Of a DNA stretch of 64,000 nucleotides, positions 2,883 through 48,341 are shown piece after piece. Position 1 is the first letter of the stretch, and each line of letters starts with the position of its first letter. Below the pieces are notes generated by a model. That model was not told the DNA's origin. It saw nothing but the letters and a program-made list of their open reading frames with translations, and ran no database searches. Source of the stretch: Lytechinus pictus (Eukaryota); assembly GCF_037042905.1 (NCBI RefSeq), contig NC_087259.1:30814001-30878000 (forward strand), written 5' to 3'. The position numbers and the translations under genes are program-made.

Positions 2883-3105
2883 NNNNNNNNNNNNNNNNNN
2901 NNNNNNNNNNNNNNNNNNNNNNNNNNNNNNNNNNNNNNNNNNNNNNNNNNNNNNNNNNNNNNNNNNNNNNNNNNNNNNNNNNNNNNNNNNNNNNNNNNNN
3001 NNNNNNNNNNNNNNNNNNNNNNNNNNNNNNNNNNNNNNNNNNNNNNNNNNNNNNNNNNNNNNNNNNNNNNNNNNNNNNNNNNNNNNNNNNNNNNNNNNNN
3101 NNNNN
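2883..3105. other. Assembly gap (223 N)
   Basis: Run of N. Confidence 1.
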
Positions 3106-5579: not shown

Positions 5580-6666
5580 AGGTGTAGTCGTCTAGGGACA
5601 CTGACTGGTGTAGGTTGTAACACCACAGTTTTTACACTGTAATTAACGGAGCAAGAATAATATCAAGAAATACTATTCTGCTCTTAATAATAAGTGAAAT
5701 ATAACCACACATCTTCAAACTAGAAAAAATATTCAAAACTTGATTGTGCATATTCGAGCTATCACAACACTAAAAGGAAAGATGGCATTCTTTGCCATTC
5801 TTTGCAAAAAATCACATTTGCATGCCATTTGTGCAATAATATGAAACAGCACAAATTATGTTGAAACAAAAATCACATTTCTCAAATCTGTCATGTCATG
5901 TCCTGGTATAGAGTATTACATGATCATCAACCTTAAAAAGCTATGAAAATTGCATCCAAAATATAAGGAATTAATACCGAAATGTGAGAGATATCAATGA
6001 GTATGTATTTTCCATAATCTCTCCAAACAAGAAGAATACCACAGAATGAAATACACACATTCTCACATAGTCATATAAGAGGTTACAGATTTTTTGCACT
6101 ACATATATTCATGACATTGTGTGAATTGATTTCTTCAACTACTTTAACTGTTTTTATATATAATGTATTATTCTGTTTTCAAAAATTGAAGTTGACTGAT
6201 GATAGTAGATAGCTATAGAATTTGCAATTATTTTAGGTTATAATTTAAAAAAAATTCATTGAATTCTCCATATTTAACCAATCAGACAATACAGATGTAC
6301 TTTTCAAATCCATGATCTTAATAATTTTATCTGTGTGATCAACCCAACAATACGTTCTCCAATATCACATAATGTATATCAACTTAATCATTTATATTTT
6401 CTAGTCTCAATCATGTCATGGGTTAAGATGATGTAATTGATACTATTGCAAATTTCAAACTCTTTTAAACACACTGGAACCAATAGATTCTGAAATCTAA
6501 TTACGGCTCCTTCTGATTTCATAACAAGTTTCAAACTGCCTTGTTGAATGAAATTCATATCATTGAAGAAGATGTCGATTCCATCCTGTTCATATATACG
6601 TACATAGTACGAATACTGATCAGTTCTAATCTTAATATTTCAAATCTTTGTCTGCAAAGAGGACAT

Positions 6667-6850
6667 TTAATGTTGACTAGTTGTTAGGCAACGTTGTTTT
6701 AAGGCTTGTAGCGCCCTCATGAGTCTCTGATTAGCCAAGTCTAAGGATTGAATGCGGATCTCTTGGGCGTCGATGATCTTTTGTTTGGCTTTGACTGCAC
6801 CCCTCATCCCCTCTTGCTCCGCCCGCAATTCTTCTTCCACGCACATCAGC
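6667..6850 (-). CDS. RASAL2-like: RasGAP terminal exon P, coiled coil ([61 protein letters not shown])
   Basis: ctttag acceptor, phase 2, TAA at 6669-6667. Matches the RASAL2/DAB2IP-type C-terminal coil. Confidence 0.95.
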
Positions 6851-9800
6851 CTAAAGAGGGCAGCAAACAGAAATAATGTAAGAAAAAAAATGACAAAATT
6901 AGCAAATAGGCCAATGATCAATGTTACTTCAATAAAATCTTATATCATTTTTTAAACAAATCATCTATTTATTTGATTTGATTCTTTTTATCAGTTTTGT
7001 ACATGTAGGACTGTAGAAATTTACAAGATATATTTCATGTGATGAATGTTAACTCTTCAGATAATCTATGATCATTATAATTATTCATTATCATTCTCAC
7101 ACTACAATATGAATCAGGGTATACAAATATATAGCAAAATTCTAGAAACAGGCATTATGTGCTAAATAAATATAATCGTAATATTCTTGTTCTATCAATA
7201 TATGATTTTTTATGCTATGATTCTATCTATGTAATATGATATAACAATATCTGTTTATATGTACACACATGTAGTTATATTGTGAATATGATTCTCAATA
7301 GAAATCAATTATTTTCCATGCTTTACTTTTAATATTGGTATATTTATCTATGTTTCACTGGCTATTAGAGTCTAAAAATGTGTCATTTTTAATGTTTAAG
7401 TTGGATGATTGACTCACAAGCGATACACAGGAGAAAGGAAACATGATTGTTTTCAAAACATGTCGGCATGGCAACACAGCAAACAAATTTGAATTTCATT
7501 CTCATATTTAGTAACAAGTAACTAACACACAGGGAAATGTTGCATATAAAATACTGGATAATTTGTATGTTTTGGAGCCAGAAGGGCTATAGCCCATCTG
7601 AAATAAACCCCTCTGGCTAACTTACAGATGACAACTTTCTGTTTGACTAAAAAGAGCACATACAGCAATGTTTGATCATTCTATCAGTGGATGCAAGAAT
7701 ATAGATCTTTGAGGTGAAATACTCTGGTGTTGAAAAGTTTTAATCCAAAAATGGTCCTCCATATCTGAGATGAATTCAAGCCATGCATAACATCAAAATA
7801 GAGATTTATGAAAATAACAAGCACACAAAGTTTGTTAATAAAAGCCATGCATGTAATACTCTATGAAGTCTGAAGCATAGGCTACAAGATAGTCATTGAT
7901 CTCATCATACATGCACATTGAGAATATATAGCCTCGATTCAGAAACAGATGATTATTTATTACATCCCCTTAGGTAAACCAAATGTAGTTTAATAATCTC
8001 CTGTTTTCCTATACACATCTTGAATTGACAGTATACATTAAATCTAATTACAGACTTCTAGCATTCAAGATGGTCCTAAATACTTCCATCATTATTCAGT
8101 TCCAAACCATAACTCTATACTCCAAACCACTACACGTCAAAGTCCCGGTTAATATTACCCTGTACTTCTCCACTAAAAAGGAAACGTTTTTAATAGACCA
8201 AAAATCACCAACTTGGTTTCAATGGAATGGACTGAAATCATTTTGATAACCCAAACTTGCACAAAGCTTGCAGAACAGAACCATAAACAATGTATGCTGA
8301 CTAGATATCCATTTTCCATTAATTATTAGGCCTAATGTAGATTATTCATTAGTAACGTAGTAGAGATGATGACGATAACCATGTACATCTCAGTCCACCA
8401 AAAAATGTATCCACAAAGAAATCACAATGAAAAAATCTACTTCACAATGATTTATTATAAGTTACATTCCATTATAAAGCTAGAAAATTAAGTTTTTGTA
8501 GTTTTTGTTTGCTGATGAAAAGTAGCACTGATTGATTTAGAGTATTATGTGCACAAGACCCGCCACCCCCCTTACATTCAAAAATCTGTACCAACAGTTT
8601 CACAGTCATATGACTTGTATAAAATCATCTAATTGTGATCTTGTGAAAATTTGCAGAATATCATTTCCGGAAGAGTTTAAGAGTTCTAAGTGCCTGATGA
8701 CCTGAGTAAGCATTTTTAAAATCTCACCTTGGATGCATTCTCCCAAGTAAACAAATCACAAAATCTAGTATATTGAAAATGAGAGAGTGAGTATAAAATC
8801 TGGCTCTTGCATGAGAACTGGCATCATAGGAAAAGAAAAAGTATCTATTTTCATCCCCCAGAATAAAATTATTCAGAAAGAGTAATTACCAACAGTTTAT
8901 ACACCCTAGAGAAATATCACCATTCAAATCTCAATGATAAAAAAATTCCCCTGAAAGTAACAAAGGAAGGCAAGCTGACTGATAGCTTTAGGATAAAAAT
9001 AATGTGTGAAAATTCAAACACTTTGGAATTTGTGAATTCCCTCAAAGCAATTATTGATATTTCATAAGTTAACACCACCACAGGAGTGATTTCTCTTCTT
9101 ATTTTCAATAGAAGTGTTAGATTGCTCACTATTTCACCTGTTCATGTTAGTCACATTTGCAACTGAATTATTTTATCAAAAACCTTAGGCACTTTTAATG
9201 TAAATGATGCTTATTGAAAAATAATTTACAGTGTCTTTTTTAAAAGTAAATTCAGTTCTCTGGCAATATCTATTAATGATTCAGAGTATAAAATTTAAAA
9301 TCTTGAAAATAAGTTAACCAAAAAAAATCCAATACGCTTCCTCAAGATGAAAAATATTCAATAGACTGTCTTCAATCAATATTATCCTGGATATTAAATC
9401 TTCGTAAAAAAAAAGACATTTATGAAATATAAATTAAGTCCACCAAGTATCAGACATTTATCAAACACCCTTACTTCTTTGAAAAGACTAAACATCAATG
9501 TATGGAAAACAGATCACTCAACTCATAACAATATGATATGATAATACATTGCATATGAGCAGGTAGACAGCTGGTCTATTTAAATCTGACCTTTATAATT
9601 GCCTTCCCCCAAACCATGGTAGTAATATCATACACAGTGTGAGTTTACACATTAATGTTGGAATGTAGTCAATGTACTGATTTGTAAATTAATGGCTCTG
9701 CTCCACAGTACAATATTAATCTAATCAGCAAATACACTCCAGTCAGGTCCCTACGTTCATCTAACTCTGGTTTCCAAGTTATTCCTAAATCCGTTAAGAC

Positions 9801-12800
9801 ATGGGGGTTCGGACTTTTGCTCGCGCTGGCCCTATTCTCTGGAATGATCTTCCCCTGACAATCCGTGAATGCACGTCCATTGACACATTTAAACGTTACC
9901 TTAAGACTCGTCTATTCAATGCCTCTTACTCTTAATTGTTCCTGAATCTATTACTATTATATTTGTACTTTTTCTCTTTCGTTCTTTCTCTCTTCTTTCA
10001 CTGCGCCTTGGGCACTCTGCCGAGTGGATTTGGCGCATTACAAATCACATATATTATATTATTATATAACCCCTTTCCAATGATTCCAATACAACATAAT
10101 ATTATGAAATGCTAGTTTGATGCTGATGACTCCTGTCTGAAGAAAATAGGATAATGACACAGTAATGACAAATACCACACCAATGATAATTTCACTGAAA
10201 CCCAAACCCATCTTTAATCATATATTTAACATTAATTAAAATGATGACCCTTCAGATTATTTTCTAAGAAAGCCCTTTTAATCTCTACACGTGTACCATT
10301 CCTGTCAATGCTAGGAATCCTTTAATTCTTTATTATATTTTTTAGATAGAAGACTTCAGGACGAAGAATAGAATCTGAACATTTTTTTTCAAGTTATGAT
10401 AAATGGATGGGAAAATAAAGTCTACTGAATTAATTAAAAACTACTTTAGATTTTGATATAAAATCAGTTTACTGTTGAGGTTCACTAAACATGGGACACG
10501 GAATGGTTTTCAAAGGGGGGGGGGGCTGACCATGCAAACAATCACAATCGTATGGTCATTTTTATGTTTTTGTACATGGTTTTGGAATAAAGTGGGGGGC
10601 TGAAGCCCCCCCCCCATTCCGCGGCCCCTCTGCTAAATAGTCTACATAAGAGCTCAATGTCAGATGTGAGGGTGTGAACAAACAAAACTTGTGAGTTCAG
10701 GAAAGAATTAATTACATTACAATAGGTAATGATGCAGGATGCTATATAAAGGCACTGTATCATAAAGCTTAGCGATTGATTGTGTGGAAATTTCTATGAT
10801 TGATTGCATAGTGTATAATCAATACTAAAAATAAACCCTGTGATCAATCGCTAAGTTTGATGTTACAGGGCCCTGGTTTATGATTGATGAGTTAATTTCA
10901 AGGAGGGTGGGGGGGGGGGGGCTTTCATTCAATTTAAGTATAACAAGCTAAAGGGAGTGCAAAACAAACACATTATTGGACAATGAGAAGGTGAGGAGGT
11001 GGAGGGGGGGGGGCAAGATTGATTTCTTGTCAAGAGGAAGAAGATGGTGAGAGAAAGAGAGACAGAGAGAAACAAAAAGGTGTACGTAGTGTAAGTAATA
11101 AAAAAAATATGAAAGAGAAGAAATTGCCATAGTAACATCTAAAATTTGCAGAAATGAAAAATTTTACGACGTCTTGAATTGATTACAACAGTTAAGACTG
11201 AACGCATTACACACAAATCAAATATTTAACACTTGAATTAGAAGTCAAAATGCAGCAATTTCACTTAAATCCCATTAAATATTTTTCTAATTTGTAAAGG
11301 TTCTACTTTTAGGGTTATTTTAGCAGTAACAAGTGAAGCTGTAAGGTTTTCAAGTTCTCTACGTAGATTAATTAATAGTAATTTTCTGCTTAATTTTTTT
11401 TGCTTAAATCACAAAATTGCTATGTTGCATGGGTTTATTTCATTAAAGGGATTGGAATCACATCTATAATACAGTTTCATGCTGGAGACAAAGATATATA
11501 GGGGTATAAAGGGATTTAGGAAGGGGGGTTGTACTTTGTAAGGTGAATACACAAATATGTGTATCAAATGTTAGGGACAAGATATATTACTGCCTTGCAA
11601 TTTGACAAAGATTAATCATTGGAACACTAGAAATCTACCACCATAACAAATAACAAAGCTTTATTCTTATCAAAAATTGATCATTATACCTGTTTTTACT
11701 AGTTGTCCTTAAAAACATCTTAAATGAAAATTGTAGAACTATTACCAATGGCTTAAGAGAGATACCTCTTGAATATAAAAAAAACATCAGTTTGACAATA
11801 CATCAACCATAATGTCATTACTTGATCAATGATATAAATTCATATCATTATAGACATCTAAGAAAAATAAATCAAAATTACGAGTTTTCCTCTATTTGTT
11901 TCTTAAAATGTAGGTTAAAGGTAATGAGACAACCTCCACAAGAATATTATTATTGCATGGGGATGAACTGAGTTGAACATATCAATGACTAATAATATGT
12001 TTTAAAGGGTTTCTTTTTGTAGTTGTTGCAAATTGAGATGAAGAAATACATCCACACTTGTTGAATATGAATATGATGGTTGATTTCATGATCAGAAAGT
12101 TAGAGCCAGACTTGAAATAACAATACTAGTATATTAAAAGTGTTATGGCATTCCAAAGAGTATTATTACGGCCTCAATCAAGTGAAATGATTTGAAATAA
12201 GAAGAAGATACCAACAATGTTATGACATTCCAGAGAAATAAGGTATTATTACAGTTTCAATAAAGTGAAAATGGTTATAGATAGAATGAGTAAATAGGAA
12301 TTGTTCTTTCCCCAAGATGCAAAACGATTACCAACCATAATTCCCCCTCTGTCTTTTCATCATCAACAACTTGACATACGGAGGATCGGAATTCAACCCT
12401 GAGAGATGAGATAACACAGCACCAAAATAATCATCATTGTTGGAATAAAAATAGAAGAGGTAGCATTGCAAATAGCAATAAATCAAACAGAAAAGTAAAG
12501 CATGACTGAAAAAACGTTAGGAAAAAGTGAAAGTGGAGCAAGAAAATAAACGTTAAACATAAAAGATAGCAAAAATAAAGGAAAATTGAATCTTAGTAGC
12601 AGAAAAAACAAGCCTAGCAAAAAGAACATCTCATTTAGGAAACAAAAATAATAAATAGAAATAATTAAGAACATAAAAGAGCAAATAAAACAAAAACATA
12701 CAAGGGGACTGGCTTTCTATGACAGAATTCTACAAGGGGATATTACACAAATAATACAACTAGGGGGTCAAAGGTGAGGGTGGGTGCAAAGGTCAAAGGA

Positions 12801-15800
12801 TAATTCTGCAAGAATAAATTACTAAGAGATTATGGATAAAGGGTGCATTAGACTAGTTTCATCTAAGCAAATCAACTTCATCATTTAGAGACAAGCTGCT
12901 AACGAGATGCTAACATTGAGAGGAAGCAGGGGGAACTGTGGGGGGGGGGGGGGTTGAACAGATGGAGGATGGGGGTCTACAAGTGGTGGAAGGAGTTTAC
13001 AGGTGGTGGAAGGGGTCTACAGGTGGTTGAAGGGTGGTTTCTCACTGCGGGGGAGGGGGTCTTGCTTGGTGGACACTAACATCAAGAGAACCTGTCGTTA
13101 TTATACCTTCACTAAAGATGGGTTGAGAATGTGATAATGAGGTGGGCAGTGTTAGGAAGAGAAGGATAGGGACATGGTTAGATAATCCAATGGAAGCTTC
13201 AGTGCACGGTGTGTGACGATGGGAGAAAGGAAATACATGTTAGAACACCATCTAATAAACAGTGATTCTATCAAATCATTCATTCTACTCTAAACTAAAA
13301 TGAGATATACTGACAATGTATCCTTTATCTATAACCTTATATTTCATTGTGTGAAATAGAACTAATTTACAATAGCCAAACAAATTTCCAAGACCCAGAT
13401 TCAACTTAAATATAACCATATTTCAAAACTTGGAGAATACTTCTACATAAACCTATCTCCCTCAGTCTTCTACCAGACACATAGGTTCACTCACCAAGTC
13501 ATTTTAAACACATGTTTTAAGAAACCAATATTTCATAGTTTATAATAACTTATATATTTTATGTGTAATGGAATAATCATCATAGCAGTGGTGTATTGAG
13601 AAAGTTTTCAGATTATATAACACAAACCAATATCATATTCACTTCCACACATTTCCCCAAACAGTGTAGCAAATTTTCAACAAGAGTGAGACAAAACACC
13701 CCACAGAAATAATCCCACTCAACATAAAAACCTATCACCCCAAAACACTCCATCTTAAGAAAAAGATAAGCAAAAACAAATAACAGTTAGGCAACAGAAG
13801 CAGTAGCCGTTTCCATTGAAATCAAGTCAGTGCTAAAACAAAAATATTTCATTCCAACTGAAATTCAATAAAAGCAAATTGAAACAGTGTAAGAGAAAGG
13901 AGAGATGATGGAATGATAGTTGAAAAATAAAGGTAGAAGAAATAGGAGGAAACAATGATAATATTCATCAAGAAAAGTCATGAAAAAATGAGAATGATAA
14001 TCTTCAAGAATAAGACCCTGAAAAATATGATAAATTAAATTCAATTATATTTGTAAAAAATAATGCCAATACTTTATCAATTGCATGAATACAAAGTAAA
14101 AGTAACAATTGCAACGATACTTTGTTATTAACTTATTTGGTGATGTTTGAAGCAAATTGCAAAGAAAAATATGTTCTTGAAGGCATGAACAAAGAAGTGA
14201 ATTGCAGTATTAAAATAAATATCTTTAAAATAATACTAAAAATATGAATTGAGTAGAAATAGCAACAGATGAGTGATTTTGCTTTTACTCAGAGACAACA
14301 GGAGAAAAATATTCACAATGTATAGCAAAAGTTGATAAAACTTGTCCCTTTCTTTAATAGATGATAAAAGCATTCATAATAACGAGGCAATATAATATTC
14401 TCATTTTGAATACCTAATTTTGATATACTTGCATTCCAAAATGCAATTAAATACAAGGATAAAAAAGAGAATAAGTGATGAAATGATATGAGGTGAAGTG
14501 AGATGAGGGCAGGCCAGTGATTGAGAGAAAAGCGACGTTGATGACGACGACGGCGCATACATACCGACACTAGGGATAGGAGGCTATTATAGGTTGACCA
14601 TTAGCTATTAATTAAAGGGAAAAGAAAAAAGGGGAGCAAGTGGTAGTATGAGGGTTGGTGGAACACAGCGCTGTACAAATATTGCGAGTGATTGGTTGAC
14701 AGGGAAAGGGGGGAGGGGTGATGGATGAAAGTTCACCTTGAAAATTTATGTATTCCCTGTGTTCTTAGTAAGGGTATATATTATTTATGCCATCGTAATG
14801 TTCAGGAATAGATGGTGAAAATGGCAAAAAAAAACCAGGGGTACAATTATTAATTCTAACACACTCTGAAGCTTGAAAGAAAATTATGAGATATCTAGTA
14901 ATCAAATAAGAATAAGCTTTAATAATAATAATAATAACGCAGTTCTTGTATAGCGCATATCACATTACGTCATAACGTCCCCATGCGCTTCCAAAGGACT
15001 TGGATATTATTACACCGGCTTTAGCCCCGCAGCCTTTTACAGCGCGGTGGCATTTCAAGGAATAAATTCCTGCCAGGTACCCATTCAACTCACCTGGGTT
15101 GAGTGCAGCACAATGTGGATGAATTTCTTGCTGAAGGAAATTACGCCATGGCTGGGATTCGAACCCACTACCCTCTGTTTCAAAGTCAGAAGACTAATCC
15201 ACAGGGCCACAACGCTCCACGCTTTCTTACCCTACCCTTTTAACTATTCAATAAATTGCAGACAATTAAACAAATAATGGTAATACTTGGAACAGCGTTT
15301 CCCTAAGTTTCTAGAAGGACCTATTTTAAGTTGACTTATTTCTTCGGTGCTATATGGGAATATATCTTTTAGTAAGAATTTTTAAAAAATGGTGAACGAT
15401 CTTGAAAAAAATAAAACACTGCTTTTCTATCTTGAAAATGAATGTGAAAATCTGGATAGATTTATAGTTTTGAAGGAACAAAGCGTACAAGGTATTCTTC
15501 CTGAATGTCCCTGCGCATCAGTTAAACTGCTTCCCTATGAATTAATAAAGCTTGTATTTCTATGCAAGCTATGGATACACGCAGGATGTATCCCAAATTA
15601 AGTGTAATATAACCTAAAGCTGTTACCTTTATATATCAATCTGCAAACAACCTGATACGTGTTAACTCCAATAACTATACTTTTCTTGCATATTTGGACT
15701 AAATGTGTCTATCATTGTTGATTGTTGAATTTCCTGAAAATTTACAACTTCTTTGTAATGATCTAGTTTATTAACAAAGCATTCTTTTACACCTCTGCTT

Positions 15801-18800
15801 CTCTCTCTCGAAAAAGGGTTGTTTTGCCAACATCACATAGTACATTTTTCAATTTAAAAAAAATCAAATATAGCTTCTAAAAGAGAATAATAAATTGGCA
15901 TAGGTCATAAAAATATGTCAAATTTCATTTGCTTTATGAACTTTATTATTTGATAGAGGTAAGAATATGGGGAAATTTGAAGAAATTAAAAGAATTATAC
16001 ATGACTGAACAACTGACATGTATGTTTCATGGAAAATGTGTGTATTTGTTGGTCATTACCAATGCTATAGAAATATTGCAAGAATTTGGCCCTCTTCTCC
16101 CTTACAAAAAGCCTTCATTGTCAATGCAGCAAAGGGTTTTTATCATTTATCTTTGTTATTATTTGAATAGGGATATACAATATAAATTATTATAATATGA
16201 ATAATACGCAACATTAAGAATTAAATATTATTAAAGATCAAGATTTATCAAAGTACTAAGCAGTTAGCCTCTCTTGAGTCTATCAAGATGTTAATGGGGG
16301 TTAAAGACATGTTTGGAGAATGAATGACCCTGGTTACTGGATTGGAGCACAAACGAGAATAAGACCACTGACTGAATTTCTTGAAAAAGGATCAGAAATT
16401 CACAAAGAGTAAACTTAGGTTCACACTAAACACGTACATGAACTACCCCTGTATTAAGGGTAAGGGGAAATCAATGTCATCTGCTAAAGCTTCTGGAAGG
16501 GGTCTAAATGACCTTTGACCTCATACCTGCTTATGACATCCCTGATCTGCTGGTCTTTCTCCTGCTGCTGTACTTGAAGCTCTGTCTCTGTAGCTTCAAC
16601 CTTTAACCTCATCTCTGTGAGGGCAGCCTCTGCCTTGATATCCTCTTCTTCCAGTTGTTTCTTGGTCTCAGCCAGCTGGGATGCCATCCGCTCCAGTTCT
16701 AGCTTCAGGCTAGAAATTTCATTGTCGTACTGAAGATGAAATTAAAAGAGTAATAAATGATACAAACATTAGGAGTGGATGGGTATAGTATCCATGATAG
16801 TGCCCCTTCCATTTTAATCAACATTATCATGCCTAACATATCACAATCACTATCACCACCACCACCGCAACCATCCCTGCCGCCAACACCACCACCATCA
16901 TTATCAGCATCATTATCACCATCATCATCATCCCCATAATCACCACCATCATGATAATCAATATAACTTTTATCATCATCATCATCATCATCATGTAAAA
17001 AACAAACCTAACTTTACCTGTTGTTTTTCCTCTGCAGTTGAGATGTCTCCATGAGATGGGGAGTCCTCACTGCGTCTGGTCCAGATTGGATCCTGGCTAA
17101 CGGATGCTCCTGAAGGCACAGGCTGTATCCGATGCTGGACTGATCCTACCCTGCTAGGCCTAGTCTGGAGCACTGTCGGCTCTGTAACAGGACAGAACTC
17201 CAGTGGGACGGGGCAAGTGAGTGCTTCATTAGTCAGTTTTTGTTTGGTTACTAACTGGGTGATAATATTCCTCCTTGTTGGAGGACTTTGCTGTTGGGCT
17301 AGTCCTGTGCTGTTATTAGCAGTCCGGTTGTGAGTCTGTTGGGGCATATCTAGTACTGGGAAAGCCCCTACTGTAACAGGAGTAATGGTTGCTTCCTTAG
17401 AGGGTATTTGCGATGGTGTTATGCGTATGTGTGCTGTATTATCTTGTCTAGGACGTGATACGGAGGGTAGCAAGACCTCAGAGAATGCTTTCTCTTGGTT
17501 CTGTACAACATGGTGTCTGACATTACTTGAAGGGAAAGTAGCATTATTGTAATCCTGAGATAGAGCAGTCTTAGGATTTGGCATAATTATAGAGAACTGT
17601 GGTAAATCGTGCTTCTTGCTGCTGCTCAATCGGAAAGTTGCCTCCGAACACTGCGTTGATTGATTATTGCTGTTTGGATCCAACAATACAGGAATCTCAT
17701 CCGTTGGTGTAATAAGATTTCTAAAGAAGTCTTTTCTGTGAGCATCATTTAATGCTTTCACAGCTTCAGTTGGTGACTGCGGCTGCGTACTGTCCATTTC
17801 AGTACAAATGCTACCAATAGGCAGAGTCATTTTTGTATGGATTGAGCTACTACTGCTATAGCTCTCGACTGGCAAGCGACTTTCTGTTGGCTTATAGATA
17901 TCCCCAACCATGTCTGCAGGTGGTCGGGATGATACATGTACTTTAGGGAGTGTGTGTGGTTCTATGTTTACATACGCTGGGTGCTTACTACGTGAAGTGT
18001 CTGCATGAAAACTCTTCCCCTTTGAGAACTCTGTGCGTCTAAAACGGGGTGGGGAAGCACCACTGCTAGAAGAGCTGTGCGATACATCCCCATCCAAGTT
18101 GGACAAGTCTGAATCTGCTCCGTTGCTTGGTGTACTGTTGACAGAACTCATGCTGTCTGTCCCGGCATCTTTCTGCTTTAGCGCCCTCGATGACAACTGA
18201 AAGGCAGGGTTAGAAAACGACAATGGCAGCGTGCGAGGCTTCTGCCCATTGTCATCATTCTTTGGTTTGCTTGAGTCACTAGTACTGAGGGTCGTATCGA
18301 CATTGGTATTACTACATACTGTTTCTATACACACTGTATAGACATGGCTCTTTTCCTTTGTTTCTATTCGAGTCCTTTCCTCTTCAACAATCTGTAAAGG
18401 TTCCATCTGAGAGCCAATTAGTGTTTGATCTTCACCAATATCATAATCCTCTCTGTTCACTTCAATCTCTGACTGTCTCACCATCTTTGCATGTCTGCCA
18501 TTCTTTGCATTCATAGCTCTACTGTTCAGCTTAGAGATCGATGTTGTAGAGTCACTATCTTGCTGGATGAAGTCTACTAGGCTGTTAATGGTTGATGACT
18601 TTGTAATCGTCTTATCCATAGCAACCTCGTACGGAGGCAGCATCTCGACATCGCCTGCTGTCGATGGTTCAGCATCTTCAAAGATCTTACTAAGATTCTT
18701 CTTGGCCTGTGACGTCGCTGTCGATGATGTTGAAGATGATGTCGTGGTGGTGGTAGTGGTAACTGATGTCGCACTGCTTACCGTGTTGTCAATCTCCACA

Positions 18801-45800: not shown

Positions 45801-48341
45801 ATATCACCATATTGGATAAGAAGTGGAAGTATTTTTCTTCCAGACTAGTTTATGTTTAGGCTTATTCATTGGAAAATCACCAGATTTGTTCAGCAATCAT
45901 AAAATAGATTTCCTTTTATCAATATAAGTTGATTAGAAAGGACTCCCAAACTAGAATAAAAATAATATTCAACAAAAAAACCCAAAACAAATATACCTAC
46001 AAAAAGTGAAACCTTTTTAACTTCCGATATCCAAGTTTCCCCCAATAGTTAATTGTTGTGTAGATTCATGTTTCCATACACACTACACAGCAGGTATAAA
46101 ATAAACTATGCTCGGCTGAAATGGGAATGCACTGTGTATGATGGAAATCTATGAAGTGCTACCGTGCACCCGATGTATGGCAAACAATTGCCTACGCAAA
46201 AAACAGATGATGACTAAAAGTAATGATTAATGGGTTTTGAGTTCTGCTTGAACTGAGCGCATTCCCAATGGTGGATTCAATGAAATTCAAATTTAAATTG
46301 TTAACCCTTTCAGTGCTAAAACTAATGCAGACACATACCAAAAGAATAAGATTTCATGATTCAAAATATTATTAATGCTCTAAATATAAGACACATACAT
46401 GCATAAAATGTACAATAAAAAAATTCTTGATATGTTTATTACAAATCCATAAATAATCATTTTCCACAATGTTTTTTTTTTCAGTATATGACCATTTTTC
46501 TTTACAAACTAACAAACAAATCTATAAAAAAACCTAGTTCTTATAATAACAATGAAAAAAACTCAGAATATTTCAGCTTCATTGAGTGAGTTAGCACATA
46601 CAAAACAAATACGAGAATACAACAATATCAAGCTAATTTTATACACCATGTTTAATTTTAACTTATTTCCTCCTAAACTTGCAACCCAGTGGTCTGCTAT
46701 AATTTCATTCACTAGACTATTAATATGTAAGATTACAAATAACACAAGATTAATAAATATCATCAACATATGTCATTACAGTGCATGAATGACTGTGCAA
46801 TAATGTTATCAAATATTAGTCAAAACATAAACTTGTTTCTTTCATGAGTAATTTAACATCAAATGATCCAAATCTACACCCACAATATAAGTAATAAACT
46901 GAATGTGTAAAGCTATCATGACAGAACAGATGTTATCAGGTAAAAATTGTGCAAGTCAGTTTAAGACGTTTTCATTTGAGGGTATTTGTAATGTCAGGAT
47001 GAATCCTAAATGATACTAAAATCATACAATATCCTCTAAGTAGCAAATGTTATCTGTTTCTCAATTGGTTATAGTTGATATTTTATTATAAAACTATGGA
47101 TGATGGATATCAACATTTTTTAAATTATCTTTAAAATGAACATGAACTAAATATTTGTTAAATCCCAAATAAAACTCCTGCAAAACGACAAAAAAGGATT
47201 TTTCTCAATAAAAAAAAATGATGCCTCCCTATAAAACCCTCTCTTCTAGTCAACCATGCCCCTTCTCTATGCTCTATCCTAATAATATCAATTTGATTTA
47301 TGTTTTATTATTTATCACCCACACACAAACCAACCAAATATATGTTTAACCTCAAAATGATCAATATCTAAAACTTTATGTAATTAAAATATTTAATTAG
47401 CCAGGAAGTACAATAAATATCTAGTACAATAAATATCTAGCAAAATAAAACCAACAGACAGATTGTGGTAATCATAATCATTTAAAACCTTGTAATACTC
47501 TTTACTTCTTCAAATATTCACCTTGAAAACTACCAAATTAGTAAATAATCAAAAATTATTTGACCTACATGTAAAACTTGTAGGTATTTATCCTGTAACT
47601 AAGTGTAGCAAGGGAACATTTTTTGCTTAAAACAAATACACAAATAACCAAATAACATGGAATAAAAGATGCATACTAAACTAAAGGTGACAGCTTGCGG
47701 TATGATCTTGCATGATATATTCACAAATATTACAATTGTCACAATTCTTGAACAATATATGGATAGAATGAAGGATACTGCTGTATGTGAATAAGTGTAG
47801 ATATGTGAAATTGTTTTATTTTTTAAAAAATATATCTACTTACTCTCGTCCATCCCAACTGTGGCAATATTTTTTTGTGAAACAATAAAATATGAATTAT
47901 TCAAAATCTGATGAGCGAAGCAAAGCTCAAAAGGGAGAGGCTTAATACACGCACATATGCTTAACCCCCCACCCCCTAGAATATATTATTTGTTAAAATT
48001 CATTTTTAGCATGATAAAAAGCAAACACACTGTAGAAGGGTAGAAATCCTGTTTGTTTTCTATATAAATGTTGCATATAGTTATGAGTACATGTAGCAGG
48101 GTGTTGCTTAATTTTGCTTTCAATATTGGGCAGTTCCATAAAATATGTGTGAGCGGCATATTTGTGAAACAATTTCCAGTTTTCTCTTTCATATGGAATA
48201 CTCATGGTTTGAGCAGTCCATGACATGAAATAAATATGGGAGCTGTACAAAACATTGATTTTATGGAATTGCCCCGTTATGACATTAAATAAATGACAAT
48301 ATTAAAATGTTATTTGAATATTATTGAAAGGGCTGCATTGA

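What the first reader, a model, noticed from the sequence alone, without database searches (positions are those of the whole stretch)
6851..16526. The last intron, which splits the coiled coil, looks like a microexon hub that could diversify the RasGAP C-terminus
Seen: this 9.7-kb phase-2 intron has relatively few TEs and long minus-strand pyrimidine tracts. It contains many closely spaced AG...GT pairs that stay stop-free in the incoming frame. Frame-preserving candidates are 27 nt (14737-14763), 15 nt (13739-13753), 63 nt (12336-12398), 18 nt (11690-11707) and 21 nt (7626-7646). Several have a TGC in the pyrimidine tract. Established: neural microexons are driven by SRRM3/4 (eMIC domain) through UGC motifs; mammalian SynGAP has alternative C-termini (alpha1/alpha2/beta/gamma) and oligomerises via this coil. 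Inference: combinatorial microexon inclusion could insert 5-21 aa into the coil and tune oligomerisation. Caveat: 3n lengths are not clearly enriched over chance among all AG-GT pairs I found.
Basis: partly seen in the sequence, partly recalled or inferred. Interest (0 to 1): 0.72.

Follow-up and report, generated by a model that had tools for sequence, protein, structure and literature searches.

The report
Known alternative exons, not a microexon hub
The supposed 9.7-kb "last intron" of this sea-urchin RasGAP gene holds one conserved 63-base cassette exon and one alternative end exon with an immediate stop, both already in public gene models, and nothing supports a cluster of microexons.

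Summary
The window is Lytechinus pictus. The gene is the minus-strand "ras GTPase-activating protein nGAP-like" (SynGAP/DAB2IP/RASAL2 family).

Confirmed: the intron boundaries, phase 2, and all five AG..GT strings.

The strings are no more frequent than chance. There are 204 stop-free 3n pairs, against 212±22 in shuffles and 206 on the opposite strand.

RNA reads and RefSeq isoforms show three outcomes after exon O:
- **Cassette included.** It adds 21 aa, and 19 of the 21 are identical in S. purpuratus.
- **Direct O→P junction.**
- **Alternative last exon.** Splicing to an acceptor at 14604 gives Ser then a stop (…DVISS*). A single-copy 3.2-kb 3'UTR follows and ends near 11402, after an AATAAA.

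The other four candidates have no support from reads or isoform models. The 21-nt one lies in DNA that a strongylocentrotid contig lacks.

At 63 nt the cassette is not a microexon. The TGC motifs are at background frequency.

The junction lies 11 residues before the end of the region that aligns to the solved SynGAP coil. By inference, that is where mammalian SynGAP-β diverges.

All three isoform types are already in RefSeq, so this is ordinary and already annotated. A real 15-nt microexon exists elsewhere in the gene, at 47844-47858.

The parts
16527..16729 (-). Exon O. It encodes 67 aa of coiled coil plus 2 nt, starting in phase 0 and ending in phase 2. Its donor is CAG|gtatga.
   Evidence: Sequence. 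The joint 16729→17018 to the large upstream exon is seen in all four runs. The peptide matches L. pictus RefSeq isoforms exactly.
11402..14604 (-). Alternative last exon. The acceptor is ttaatag|C at 14604. The codon AG|C (Ser) is followed by TAA at 14601-14603, giving …DVISS*. A roughly 3.2-kb single-copy 3'UTR follows.
   Evidence: The joint 14604→16527 (GT..AG on the minus strand) appears in an X15 contig at depth 92 of 156, in 5 reads of X21 and in 1 read of X22. RefSeq Lp X5 and Lv X10 end …QIRDVISS. An X15 contig covers 11402-14593 continuously at depth 24. The stretch is single copy in the genome. The 3' extent is inferred.
11434..11439 (-). AATAAA polyadenylation signal of the alternative last exon.
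   Evidence: Sequence. The X15 contig ends at 11402, 32 nt downstream, just before a genomic A-run. That this is the poly(A) site is inferred.
12336..12398 (-). Conserved 63-nt in-frame cassette exon encoding 21 aa ([21 protein letters not shown]). Acceptor ctctcag|GG, donor ATG|gttggt. It lies inside the 3'UTR of the alternative last exon.
   Evidence: The joint 12398↔16527 is seen in 6 reads from 6 start positions in X22 and 1 read in X21, with a short side of 63 nt. RefSeq Lp X1 maps exactly with junctions 16527→12398 and 12336→6850. S. purpuratus has [21 protein letters not shown], 19 of 21 identical. The DNA is single copy.
6667..6850 (-). Exon P coding part. It encodes the last 60 aa of the coil plus the third base of the split Arg codon. 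The stop codon is at 6667-6669. The acceptor is ctttag|GC.
   Evidence: Sequence, translation, mapping of RefSeq X1 and X3.
14737..14763 (-). Unsupported.
   Evidence: The string is present. Its acceptor is weak: 11 of 23 on my scale, about the median of all AGs in the intron. It has no joint and appears in no isoform model.
13739..13753 (-). Unsupported. It lies inside the alternative 3'UTR.
11690..11707 (-). Unsupported. It lies inside the alternative 3'UTR.
7626..7646 (-). Not conserved and in no isoform model. It was not covered by the one read-laying run.
   Evidence: It falls in a 221-nt L. pictus segment (7598-7818) that corresponds to only 52 nt in the strongylocentrotid contigs L003 and L004. 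No isoform carries it.
7819..7927 (-). Intronic island alignable with the strongylocentrotid contig (74% identity). It holds two conserved TGCATG motifs, starting at 7915 and 7851. A third, at 7787, lies just outside the island and is not conserved.
   Evidence: Any regulatory role is speculation. TGCATG is not enriched in the intron as a whole: 4 observed against 2.7±1.6 expected.
14940..15220 (.). Young interspersed repeat of about 281 bp (SINE-like) with more than 3000 candidate copies at 94-97% identity. It accounts for the huge read depth at this spot.
   Evidence: Neither ARAGORN nor Rfam calls a tRNA or known RNA family here.
9687..10066 (.). Second high-copy interspersed repeat of about 380 bp, with more than 3000 candidate copies at 87-98% identity.

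Best explanation
The interval 6851-16526 is a three-way alternative-splicing module at the C-terminus of the Lytechinus pictus nGAP-like RasGAP, not one intron full of microexons. After exon O the transcript takes one of three routes.

- **Route a.** It splices to 12398 and includes a conserved 63-nt cassette. This adds 21 residues inside the coiled coil. It then splices from 12336 to exon P.
- **Route b.** It splices directly to exon P and gives an uninterrupted coil.
- **Route c.** It splices to 14604, where a stop codon follows one Ser codon. It is then probably cleaved and polyadenylated near 11402. The protein ends exactly at the O|P boundary and lacks the last 61 residues of the coil.

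Shown: the two alternative acceptor junctions in RNA, the exact mapping of the public isoform proteins, and conservation of the insert.

Inferred:
- The poly(A) site of route c.
- That the insert puts a hinge or break into the helix.
- That the truncated form has weakened oligomerisation or scaffold binding, by analogy with mammalian SynGAP-β.
For: - **Junction reads and contigs.** 16527→12398 has 6 reads in X22 and 1 in X21, with a short side of 63 nt. 16527→14604 has an X15 contig at depth 92 of 156, 5 reads in X21 and 1 in X22. An X1 contig runs 480 nt past 16526 without touching the intron, which I read as the direct O→P form.
- **Sample dependence.** Usage of the two acceptors differs between X21 and X22 (1:5 against 6:1, Fisher p=0.03).
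- **Public isoforms.** Lp X1/X2, most Lv isoforms and most Sp isoforms carry the 21 aa. Lp X3, Lv X4/X12 and Sp X8 skip it. Lp X5 and Lv X10 end …DVISS.
- **Exact mapping.** The X1 protein maps with canonical GT..AG at 16527|12398 and 12336|6850.
- **Conservation.** The insert is 19/21 identical between Lytechinus and S. purpuratus. Exon O is 85% identical and the large disordered exon 72%.
- **Route c anatomy.** The TAA follows the 14604 acceptor directly. AATAAA lies at 11434-11439 and the contig ends at 11402. The stretch 11401-14930 is entirely single copy.
- **Link to SynGAP.** The C-terminus aligns to the SynGAP coiled-coil crystal structure 5JXC at E=1.4e-8. The junction falls 11 residues before the end of the aligned coil.
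- **Structure predictions.** AlphaFold2 gives one helix at pLDDT 97 without the insert. With it, the helix breaks at the middle of the insert and pLDDT falls to about 53.
- **Other echinoderms.** The sea cucumber has a 17-aa insert, a skip form and several truncating ends at the same residue. The sea star has one alternative end there.
Against: - The donor side of the 63-nt exon rests on the "side 63" read length and the RefSeq mapping. I did not see a directly listed 12336→6850 joint, because exon P lay outside the 6-kb stretch that could be laid.
- The 14604 exon could instead be a short internal poison exon with a donor at 14565|gtatgt.
- The continuous contig 11402-14593 could be retained pre-mRNA, and contigs carry no strand.
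- X21 and X22 come from a differently labelled organism than the window.
- All functional statements rest on homology and single-sequence AlphaFold models. The trimer prediction gave no answer.
Confidence: 0.85

Rival explanations
1. The intron is a hub of several SRRM3/4-dependent microexons (15-27 nt, plus the 63-nt one), included in combinations in neural tissue to tune the coil.
For: The strings exist and are stop-free. Three have a TGC upstream. One candidate is real. The gene does use a 15-nt microexon elsewhere, so the species can splice such exons. The tissues of the RNA runs are unknown, so neural-only inclusion at low level cannot be excluded.
Against: The number of such strings equals chance and equals the opposite strand. 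TGC is upstream of 38% of all AGs. None of the three micro-sized candidates in the covered stretch has a junction. None of the four appears in the 34 full-length urchin isoform models examined. The 21-nt candidate lies in DNA missing from the strongylocentrotid contig. The real cassette is 63 nt. Three candidates lie inside the alternative 3'UTR.
Confidence: 0.04
2. The 14604 exon is a short internal "poison" cassette (about 40 nt, 14565-14604, donor CG|gtatgt). It brings in a premature stop and sends the mRNA to nonsense-mediated decay. On this view it controls dosage rather than making a truncated protein.
For: A good donor, gtatgt, lies 40 nt after the acceptor. The read short side of 38 plus 2 ambiguous letters would fit 40 nt. 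The joint contig depth (92) exceeds the depth of the downstream contig (24) in X15.
Against: No joint leaving 14565 was listed. A contig runs unbroken from 14593 to 11402 and stops 32 nt after an AATAAA. Depth downstream of 14604 (24) is far above the intron upstream of it (2-4) in X15. The 3.5 kb is TE-free, as expected of a functional UTR.
Confidence: 0.15
3. The alternative junctions are splicing noise without function.
For: Read counts are small, 1-6 per run. RefSeq isoforms are computational models.
Against: The insert peptide is 90% identical between urchin genera whose neighbouring disordered exon is only 72% identical. It is included in most models of three species. The …DVISS end is shared by L. 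pictus and L. variegatus. In X15 the 14604 junction carries more than half of the exon-O depth. Other echinoderm classes vary at the same residue.
Confidence: 0.05

Closest known systems
Mammalian SYNGAP1 C-terminal isoforms (α1, α2, β, γ), especially SynGAP-β
   Same: It is the same protein family (PH_RASGAP, C2, RasGAP and DAB2P_C domains). The coiled coil is homologous to the solved SynGAP trimer 5JXC. [quoted passage not shown] In my alignment the urchin O|P junction also lies 11 residues before the end of the aligned coil. The urchin …DVISS* form is therefore truncated at the equivalent residue, by inference. SynGAP-γ likewise uses a short exon with an early stop.
   Different: SynGAP-β arises from a frameshifting extension of exon 18, not from a separate last exon with its own 3'UTR. 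No 21-aa in-coil cassette is described for SynGAP. The urchin tail has no PDZ ligand (it ends …TTSQH). The urchin gene is named nGAP/RASAL2/DAB2IP-like rather than a SynGAP orthologue.
RefSeq gene models of L. pictus, L. variegatus and S. purpuratus "ras GTPase-activating protein nGAP(-like)" / "disabled homolog 2-interacting protein"
   Same: They hold exactly the three outcomes found here. Examples are XP_054770291.2 and XP_063966380.1 (+21 aa), XP_063966381.1 (skip), and XP_063966383.1/XP_063966384.1 (…DVISS).
   Different: These are automatic models. I found no paper that describes these isoforms or their regulation.
SRRM3/4 (eMIC)-dependent neural microexons
   Same: Both are short, frame-preserving alternative exons in a synaptic-type signalling gene. 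A UGC lies about 24 nt upstream of the 63-nt exon's acceptor.
   Different: At 63 nt it is more than twice the 27-30 nt limit. UGC is at background frequency. Neural specificity and SRRM dependence are untested. The gene's real 15-nt microexon (47844-47858, with UGC at -9 to -7 and donor gtaagt) fits this class better.

Membership tests
SynGAP/DAB2IP/RASAL2 subfamily of RasGAPs | Domain order PH_RASGAP, C2, RasGAP, DAB2P_C, followed by a C-terminal coiled coil. | tested here: met
   The precomputed Pfam domains PF25321, PF00168, PF00616 and PF12004 are on the exact L. pictus cluster and its orthologues. The exons map to the window. The coil aligns to SynGAP 5JXC at E=1.4e-8.
Cassette (skipped) exon | Both flanking junctions are used, and a skipping form exists as well. 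| tested here: met
   The upstream junction is in RNA reads. Both junctions are fixed by exact mapping of RefSeq X1. The skip form is RefSeq X3, together with the X1 contig running past 16526. The 12336→6850 joint was not itself seen in reads.
Alternative last exon | It has its own acceptor, an in-frame stop, and its own cleavage/poly(A) site upstream of the distal last exon. | tested here: inconclusive
   The acceptor junction and the stop are met. The poly(A) site is supported only by AATAAA at 11434-11439 and a contig end at 11402. No poly(A)-tailed read was seen.
Neural microexon (SRRM3/4-eMIC programme) | Length 3-27 nt (≤30 nt). | tested here: not met
   The only supported exon among the candidates is 63 nt. 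The definition comes from the abstracts listed and from PMC12992808.
Neural microexon (SRRM3/4-eMIC programme) | A UGC motif close to the 3' splice site, above background. | tested here: inconclusive
   A UGC is present upstream of three of the five candidates, but also of 38% of all AGs in the intron.
Neural microexon (SRRM3/4-eMIC programme) | Neural-enriched inclusion that depends on an eMIC-bearing SRRM protein. | not testable with these tools
   The tissues of the runs are coded. An own-genome search with PF15230 (SRRM_C) found nothing, but its controls also found nothing, so it is uninformative.
Neural microexon (SRRM3/4-eMIC programme) | Deep evolutionary conservation of the exon. | tested here: not met
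   This was tested for the 21-nt candidate only. It is absent from the orthologous strongylocentrotid sequence. The other three micro-sized candidates could not be compared, because no DNA of relatives could be fetched.

The most novel reading that the evidence does not exclude
The phase-2 intron that splits the Arg codon in …(D/S)(V/I)I(S/G)R|LM.VEEEL… would be an ancient alternative-splicing hot spot of the SynGAP/RASAL2/DAB2IP family. It would be used from echinoderms (urchin cassette and stop exon, sea-cucumber 17-aa cassette and several ends, sea-star alternative end) to mammals (SynGAP-β). Its role would be to switch the distal coiled coil, and hence trimerisation or condensate formation, on and off. 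The conserved TGCATG pair at 7851 and 7915 would be part of its control.
Probability: 0.2. Interest if true: 0.5.

Novelty: already known. Interest (0 to 1): 0.2.

Why it matters
It matters little as a discovery. The real exons are already in the RefSeq annotation of this species and its relatives, and the "microexon hub" does not survive a chance control.

There are two modest points of value:
- It is a clean worked example that AG..GT, stop-free, 3n strings in a long AT-rich intron are expected by the hundred. They should not be read as microexons without junction evidence.
- Echinoderm members of the SynGAP family vary their C-terminus at the residue that, by inference, is where mammalian SynGAP-β loses the end of its trimeric coil. 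That could make sea urchins a simple system for asking what coil integrity does for these RasGAPs.

Tried and rejected
- **DNA from relatives.** I tried to fetch the orthologous intron of L. variegatus, S. purpuratus and Diadema setosum through the look-up of encoding contigs. No DNA came back, because the gene ranges were too long or withheld. Conservation of the 27-, 15- and 18-nt candidates could therefore not be tested. Only the 1.4 kb upstream of exon P could be compared, using Logan contigs L003 and L004.
- **Homotrimer prediction.** Complex prediction on three copies of the insert-bearing coil gave "no answer" (score 0.00). This is evidence neither way.
- **SRRM_C search.** An own-genome search with PF15230 was blank, and so were its controls, so it is uninformative.
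- **RNA genes.** Rfam and ARAGORN on 6000-17500 found nothing, so the very deep read pile at about 15000-15200 is an interspersed repeat and not an RNA gene of a known family.
- **Short protein query.** A search with exon O+P found only three fragments and no new junction variants.
- **Read coverage.** The single read-laying run was limited to 6 kb and covered 11200-17199. Exon P, the 21-nt candidate and the 12336→6850 joint were not directly observed.
- **Exonised TEs.** I considered whether the two real exons derive from TEs and rejected it. Both lie in single-copy DNA.


Full report
**What the sequence is.** The minus strand carries a RasGAP gene. The peptides of exon O (16527-16729) and of the large upstream exon (ending at 17018) are identical to RefSeq isoforms of Lytechinus pictus "ras GTPase-activating protein nGAP-like". 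The window lies at 30.81-30.88 Mb of a contig in an 812-Mb assembly. The protein has PH_RASGAP, C2, RasGAP and DAB2P_C domains. It therefore belongs to the SynGAP/DAB2IP/RASAL2 subfamily.

**Checking the observation.**
- Exon O ends AGCAG|gtatga at 16527, and exon P starts ctttag|GCTGATG at 6850. Joined, they read …QIRDVISR|LMCVEEEL… with the Arg codon split after its second base, so phase 2 is correct.
- All five candidates are at the stated coordinates, are flanked by AG and GT, and are stop-free in the incoming frame.
- Their number is what chance gives. The intron has 1433 AG..GT pairs of 9-63 nt. Of these, 470 have a length divisible by three, and 204 of those are also stop-free. First-order Markov shuffles give 212±22, and the opposite strand of the same DNA gives 206.
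- A TGC lies within 40 nt upstream of 38% of all AGs, so three of five is the background rate.
- On a transparent consensus-match score, the five candidates rank 5, 8, 10, 13 and 14 of the 204. Nothing separates them as a class.

**What RNA shows.** I laid two Logan contig sets of organism A (one holds 100% of the exon-O words) and two raw RNA-seq runs of organism B on 11200-17199.
- **Positive control.** The junction from the large exon to exon O (17018→16729) appears in all four runs.
- **First alternative junction.** It goes from the exon-O donor to 12398, skipping 12399-16526, with GT..AG on the minus strand. It has 6 reads from 6 start positions in X22 and 1 read in X21.
- **Second alternative junction.** It goes to 14604, skipping 14605-16526. 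It appears in an X15 contig at depth 92 against 156 for exon O, in 5 reads of X21 and in 1 read of X22.
- **Direct form.** In X1 the exon-O contig continues for 480 nt that do not lie anywhere in the stretch, and its first letter fits G. I read this as the direct O→P form (inference).
- **Sample dependence.** The two raw runs differ in which acceptor they prefer (1:5 against 6:1, Fisher p=0.03), so usage depends on the sample.
- **The other candidates.** No junction was listed for the 27-, 15- or 18-nt candidates. Depth was only about 10-17 reads, so rare inclusion is not excluded.

**What the public proteins show.** A profile-free search with the large exon found the S. purpuratus orthologue. 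It reads …[37 protein letters not shown]….

I listed the 90% clusters. They gave 15 Lytechinus isoforms (out of a 25-member cluster), 9 full-length S. purpuratus isoforms or earlier models that reach this junction, and one S. purpuratus earlier model with a different end (discussed below). The 24 isoforms fall into three classes at this junction:
- **+21 aa:** Lp X1 and X2, nine Lv isoforms, and six Sp RefSeq isoforms plus one earlier model.
- **Skip:** Lp X3, Lv X4 and X12, and Sp X8.
- **…QIRDVISS stop:** Lp X5 and Lv X10.

The L. pictus X1 protein maps to the window only with the junctions 16527|12398 and 12336|6850. The L. pictus insert, [21 protein letters not shown], is the translation of 12336-12398.

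**The alternative last exon.** The minus-strand sequence at the 14604 acceptor is ttaatag|C TAA…, giving Ser and then a stop. Four observations suggest that 14604→~11402 is a last exon with a 3.2-kb 3'UTR:
- An X15 contig runs unbroken from 14593 to 11402 at depth 24. The intron just upstream of 14604 has depth 2-4.
- AATAAA lies at 11434-11439, and the contig stops 32 nt later in front of an A-run.
- The whole of 11401-14930 is single copy in a genome where two neighbouring elements have more than 3000 copies each.

The poly(A) site is inferred. A rival reading is a 40-nt poison cassette (14565-14604, donor gtatgt), which I put at about 0.15.

**Is the cassette functional?** Its peptide is 19/21 identical between Lytechinus and Strongylocentrotus. 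Exon O is 85% identical, exon P 97%, and the disordered large exon 72%. Both real exons lie in single-copy DNA, so they are not exonised repeats. This argues for purifying selection on the insert.

**The 21-nt "best" candidate.**
- Logan contigs from a strongylocentrotid-like urchin (exon-P peptide identical to S. purpuratus) reach about 1.4 kb upstream of exon P.
- They align to window 7927-7819 (74% identity) and to 7597-6595 (68%). The 221 nt between these blocks in L. pictus (7598-7818), which holds the candidate and both of its splice sites, corresponds to only 52 nt there.
- The candidate is therefore not conserved, unlike the real cassette.
- Two of the three TGCATG motifs upstream of it (7915 and 7851) are conserved. 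The motif is not enriched in the intron as a whole: 4 observed against 2.7±1.6 expected.

**How it may work (inference).**
- The C-terminus aligns to the crystallised SynGAP coiled coil 5JXC at E=1.4e-8. The urchin junction (…DVISR|[11 protein letters not shown]) matches …SIIGR|LMLVEEELRRD, which is 11 residues before the end of the aligned coil.
- Published work places the SynGAP-β divergence at the exon 17-18 junction. It says β lacks the last 11 residues of the coil, co-sediments less with PSD-95 and is more cytoplasmic (PMC7314543; PMC7754318).
- The urchin …DVISS* form is thus truncated at the equivalent residue, by a different splicing mechanism.
- AlphaFold2 on single sequences gives one continuous helix (pLDDT 97) for the skip form. 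For the +21 form it gives two helices, broken at residues 84-86 of the fragment (the middle of the insert), with pLDDT near 53.
- I take this as a weak hint that the cassette puts a hinge into the coil.
- A trimer prediction gave no answer.

**Wider comparison.**
- **Sea cucumber (Apostichopus japonicus).** Its models have, at the same residue, a skip form, a 17-aa insert (SGTYSVGDSQLIPSGNG) and several truncating ends.
- **Sea star (Acanthaster planci).** One model has an alternative end there.
- **Diadema.** The models show only the skip form.
- **S. purpuratus.** An earlier model carries a further end (…DVISRESECTSYVKN).

The position, though not the inserted sequence, is variable across echinoderm classes.

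**Comparison with microexons.** Microexons are defined as 3-27 nt, or ≤30 nt (abstracts; PMC12992808). The supported exon is 63 nt. Nothing here tests SRRM dependence. A search for SRRM_C in the genome was blank, but so were its controls. The gene does own a true alternative 15-nt microexon, in another intron (47844-47858, see "noticed in passing"). This shows that the annotation pipeline can detect such exons in this gene, and it makes the absence of the four candidates from the isoform models more telling.

**Verdict.**
The strings exist but are at chance level.
One candidate is a real in-coil cassette and the interval does diversify the C-terminus. However, there is no hub, no combinatorial microexons and no SRRM evidence, and the main truncating exon was missed.
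- The real features are already annotated in RefSeq for this species, so novelty is "already known" and interest is low.

Noticed in passing
window 47844-47858 (-): A genuine alternative 15-nt microexon (cacag|TTGGGATGGACGAGA|gtaagt). It changes …PQKK-K-YFCE… to …PQKK-NWDGRE-YFCE… at the start of the C2 domain. RefSeq isoforms of L. pictus, L. variegatus and S. purpuratus either include it or skip it, with an identical peptide. It is absent from the Diadema, sea-cucumber and sea-star models. It has a UGC at -9 to -7, a weak pyrimidine tract and a strong donor, which is the look of an eMIC-type microexon.
   Followed up: partly
window 14940-15220: A roughly 281-bp interspersed repeat with more than 3000 candidate copies at 94-97% identity. 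Read depth here reaches about 100,000 in contig sets and about 2,400 per strand class in raw RNA-seq. It is a young, heavily transcribed SINE-like element. ARAGORN and Rfam do not call it.
   Followed up: partly
window 9687-10066: A second interspersed repeat of about 380 bp, with more than 3000 candidate copies at 87-98% identity.
   Followed up: no
window 7819-7927 (-): An intronic island alignable at 74% with a strongylocentrotid contig. It holds two conserved TGCATG (Rbfox-type) motifs, about 970-1070 nt upstream of exon P. They might bear on the choice among the alternative exons. This is untested.
   Followed up: partly
window 16896-16994: An imperfect (CAT)n/(ATG)n triplet array of about 33 units in the intron just after the large exon. 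The read tool skipped it as a repeat.
   Followed up: no
proteins P0040, P0045, P0046, P0048 (Apostichopus japonicus) and P0059 (Acanthaster planci): The sea-cucumber models combine a 17-aa cassette with at least three different truncating ends at the same junction. The sea star has one alternative end. This position is variable across echinoderm classes.
   Followed up: partly
window 2883-3105: A run of 223 N (an assembly gap or masked stretch). I left it untouched.
   Followed up: no
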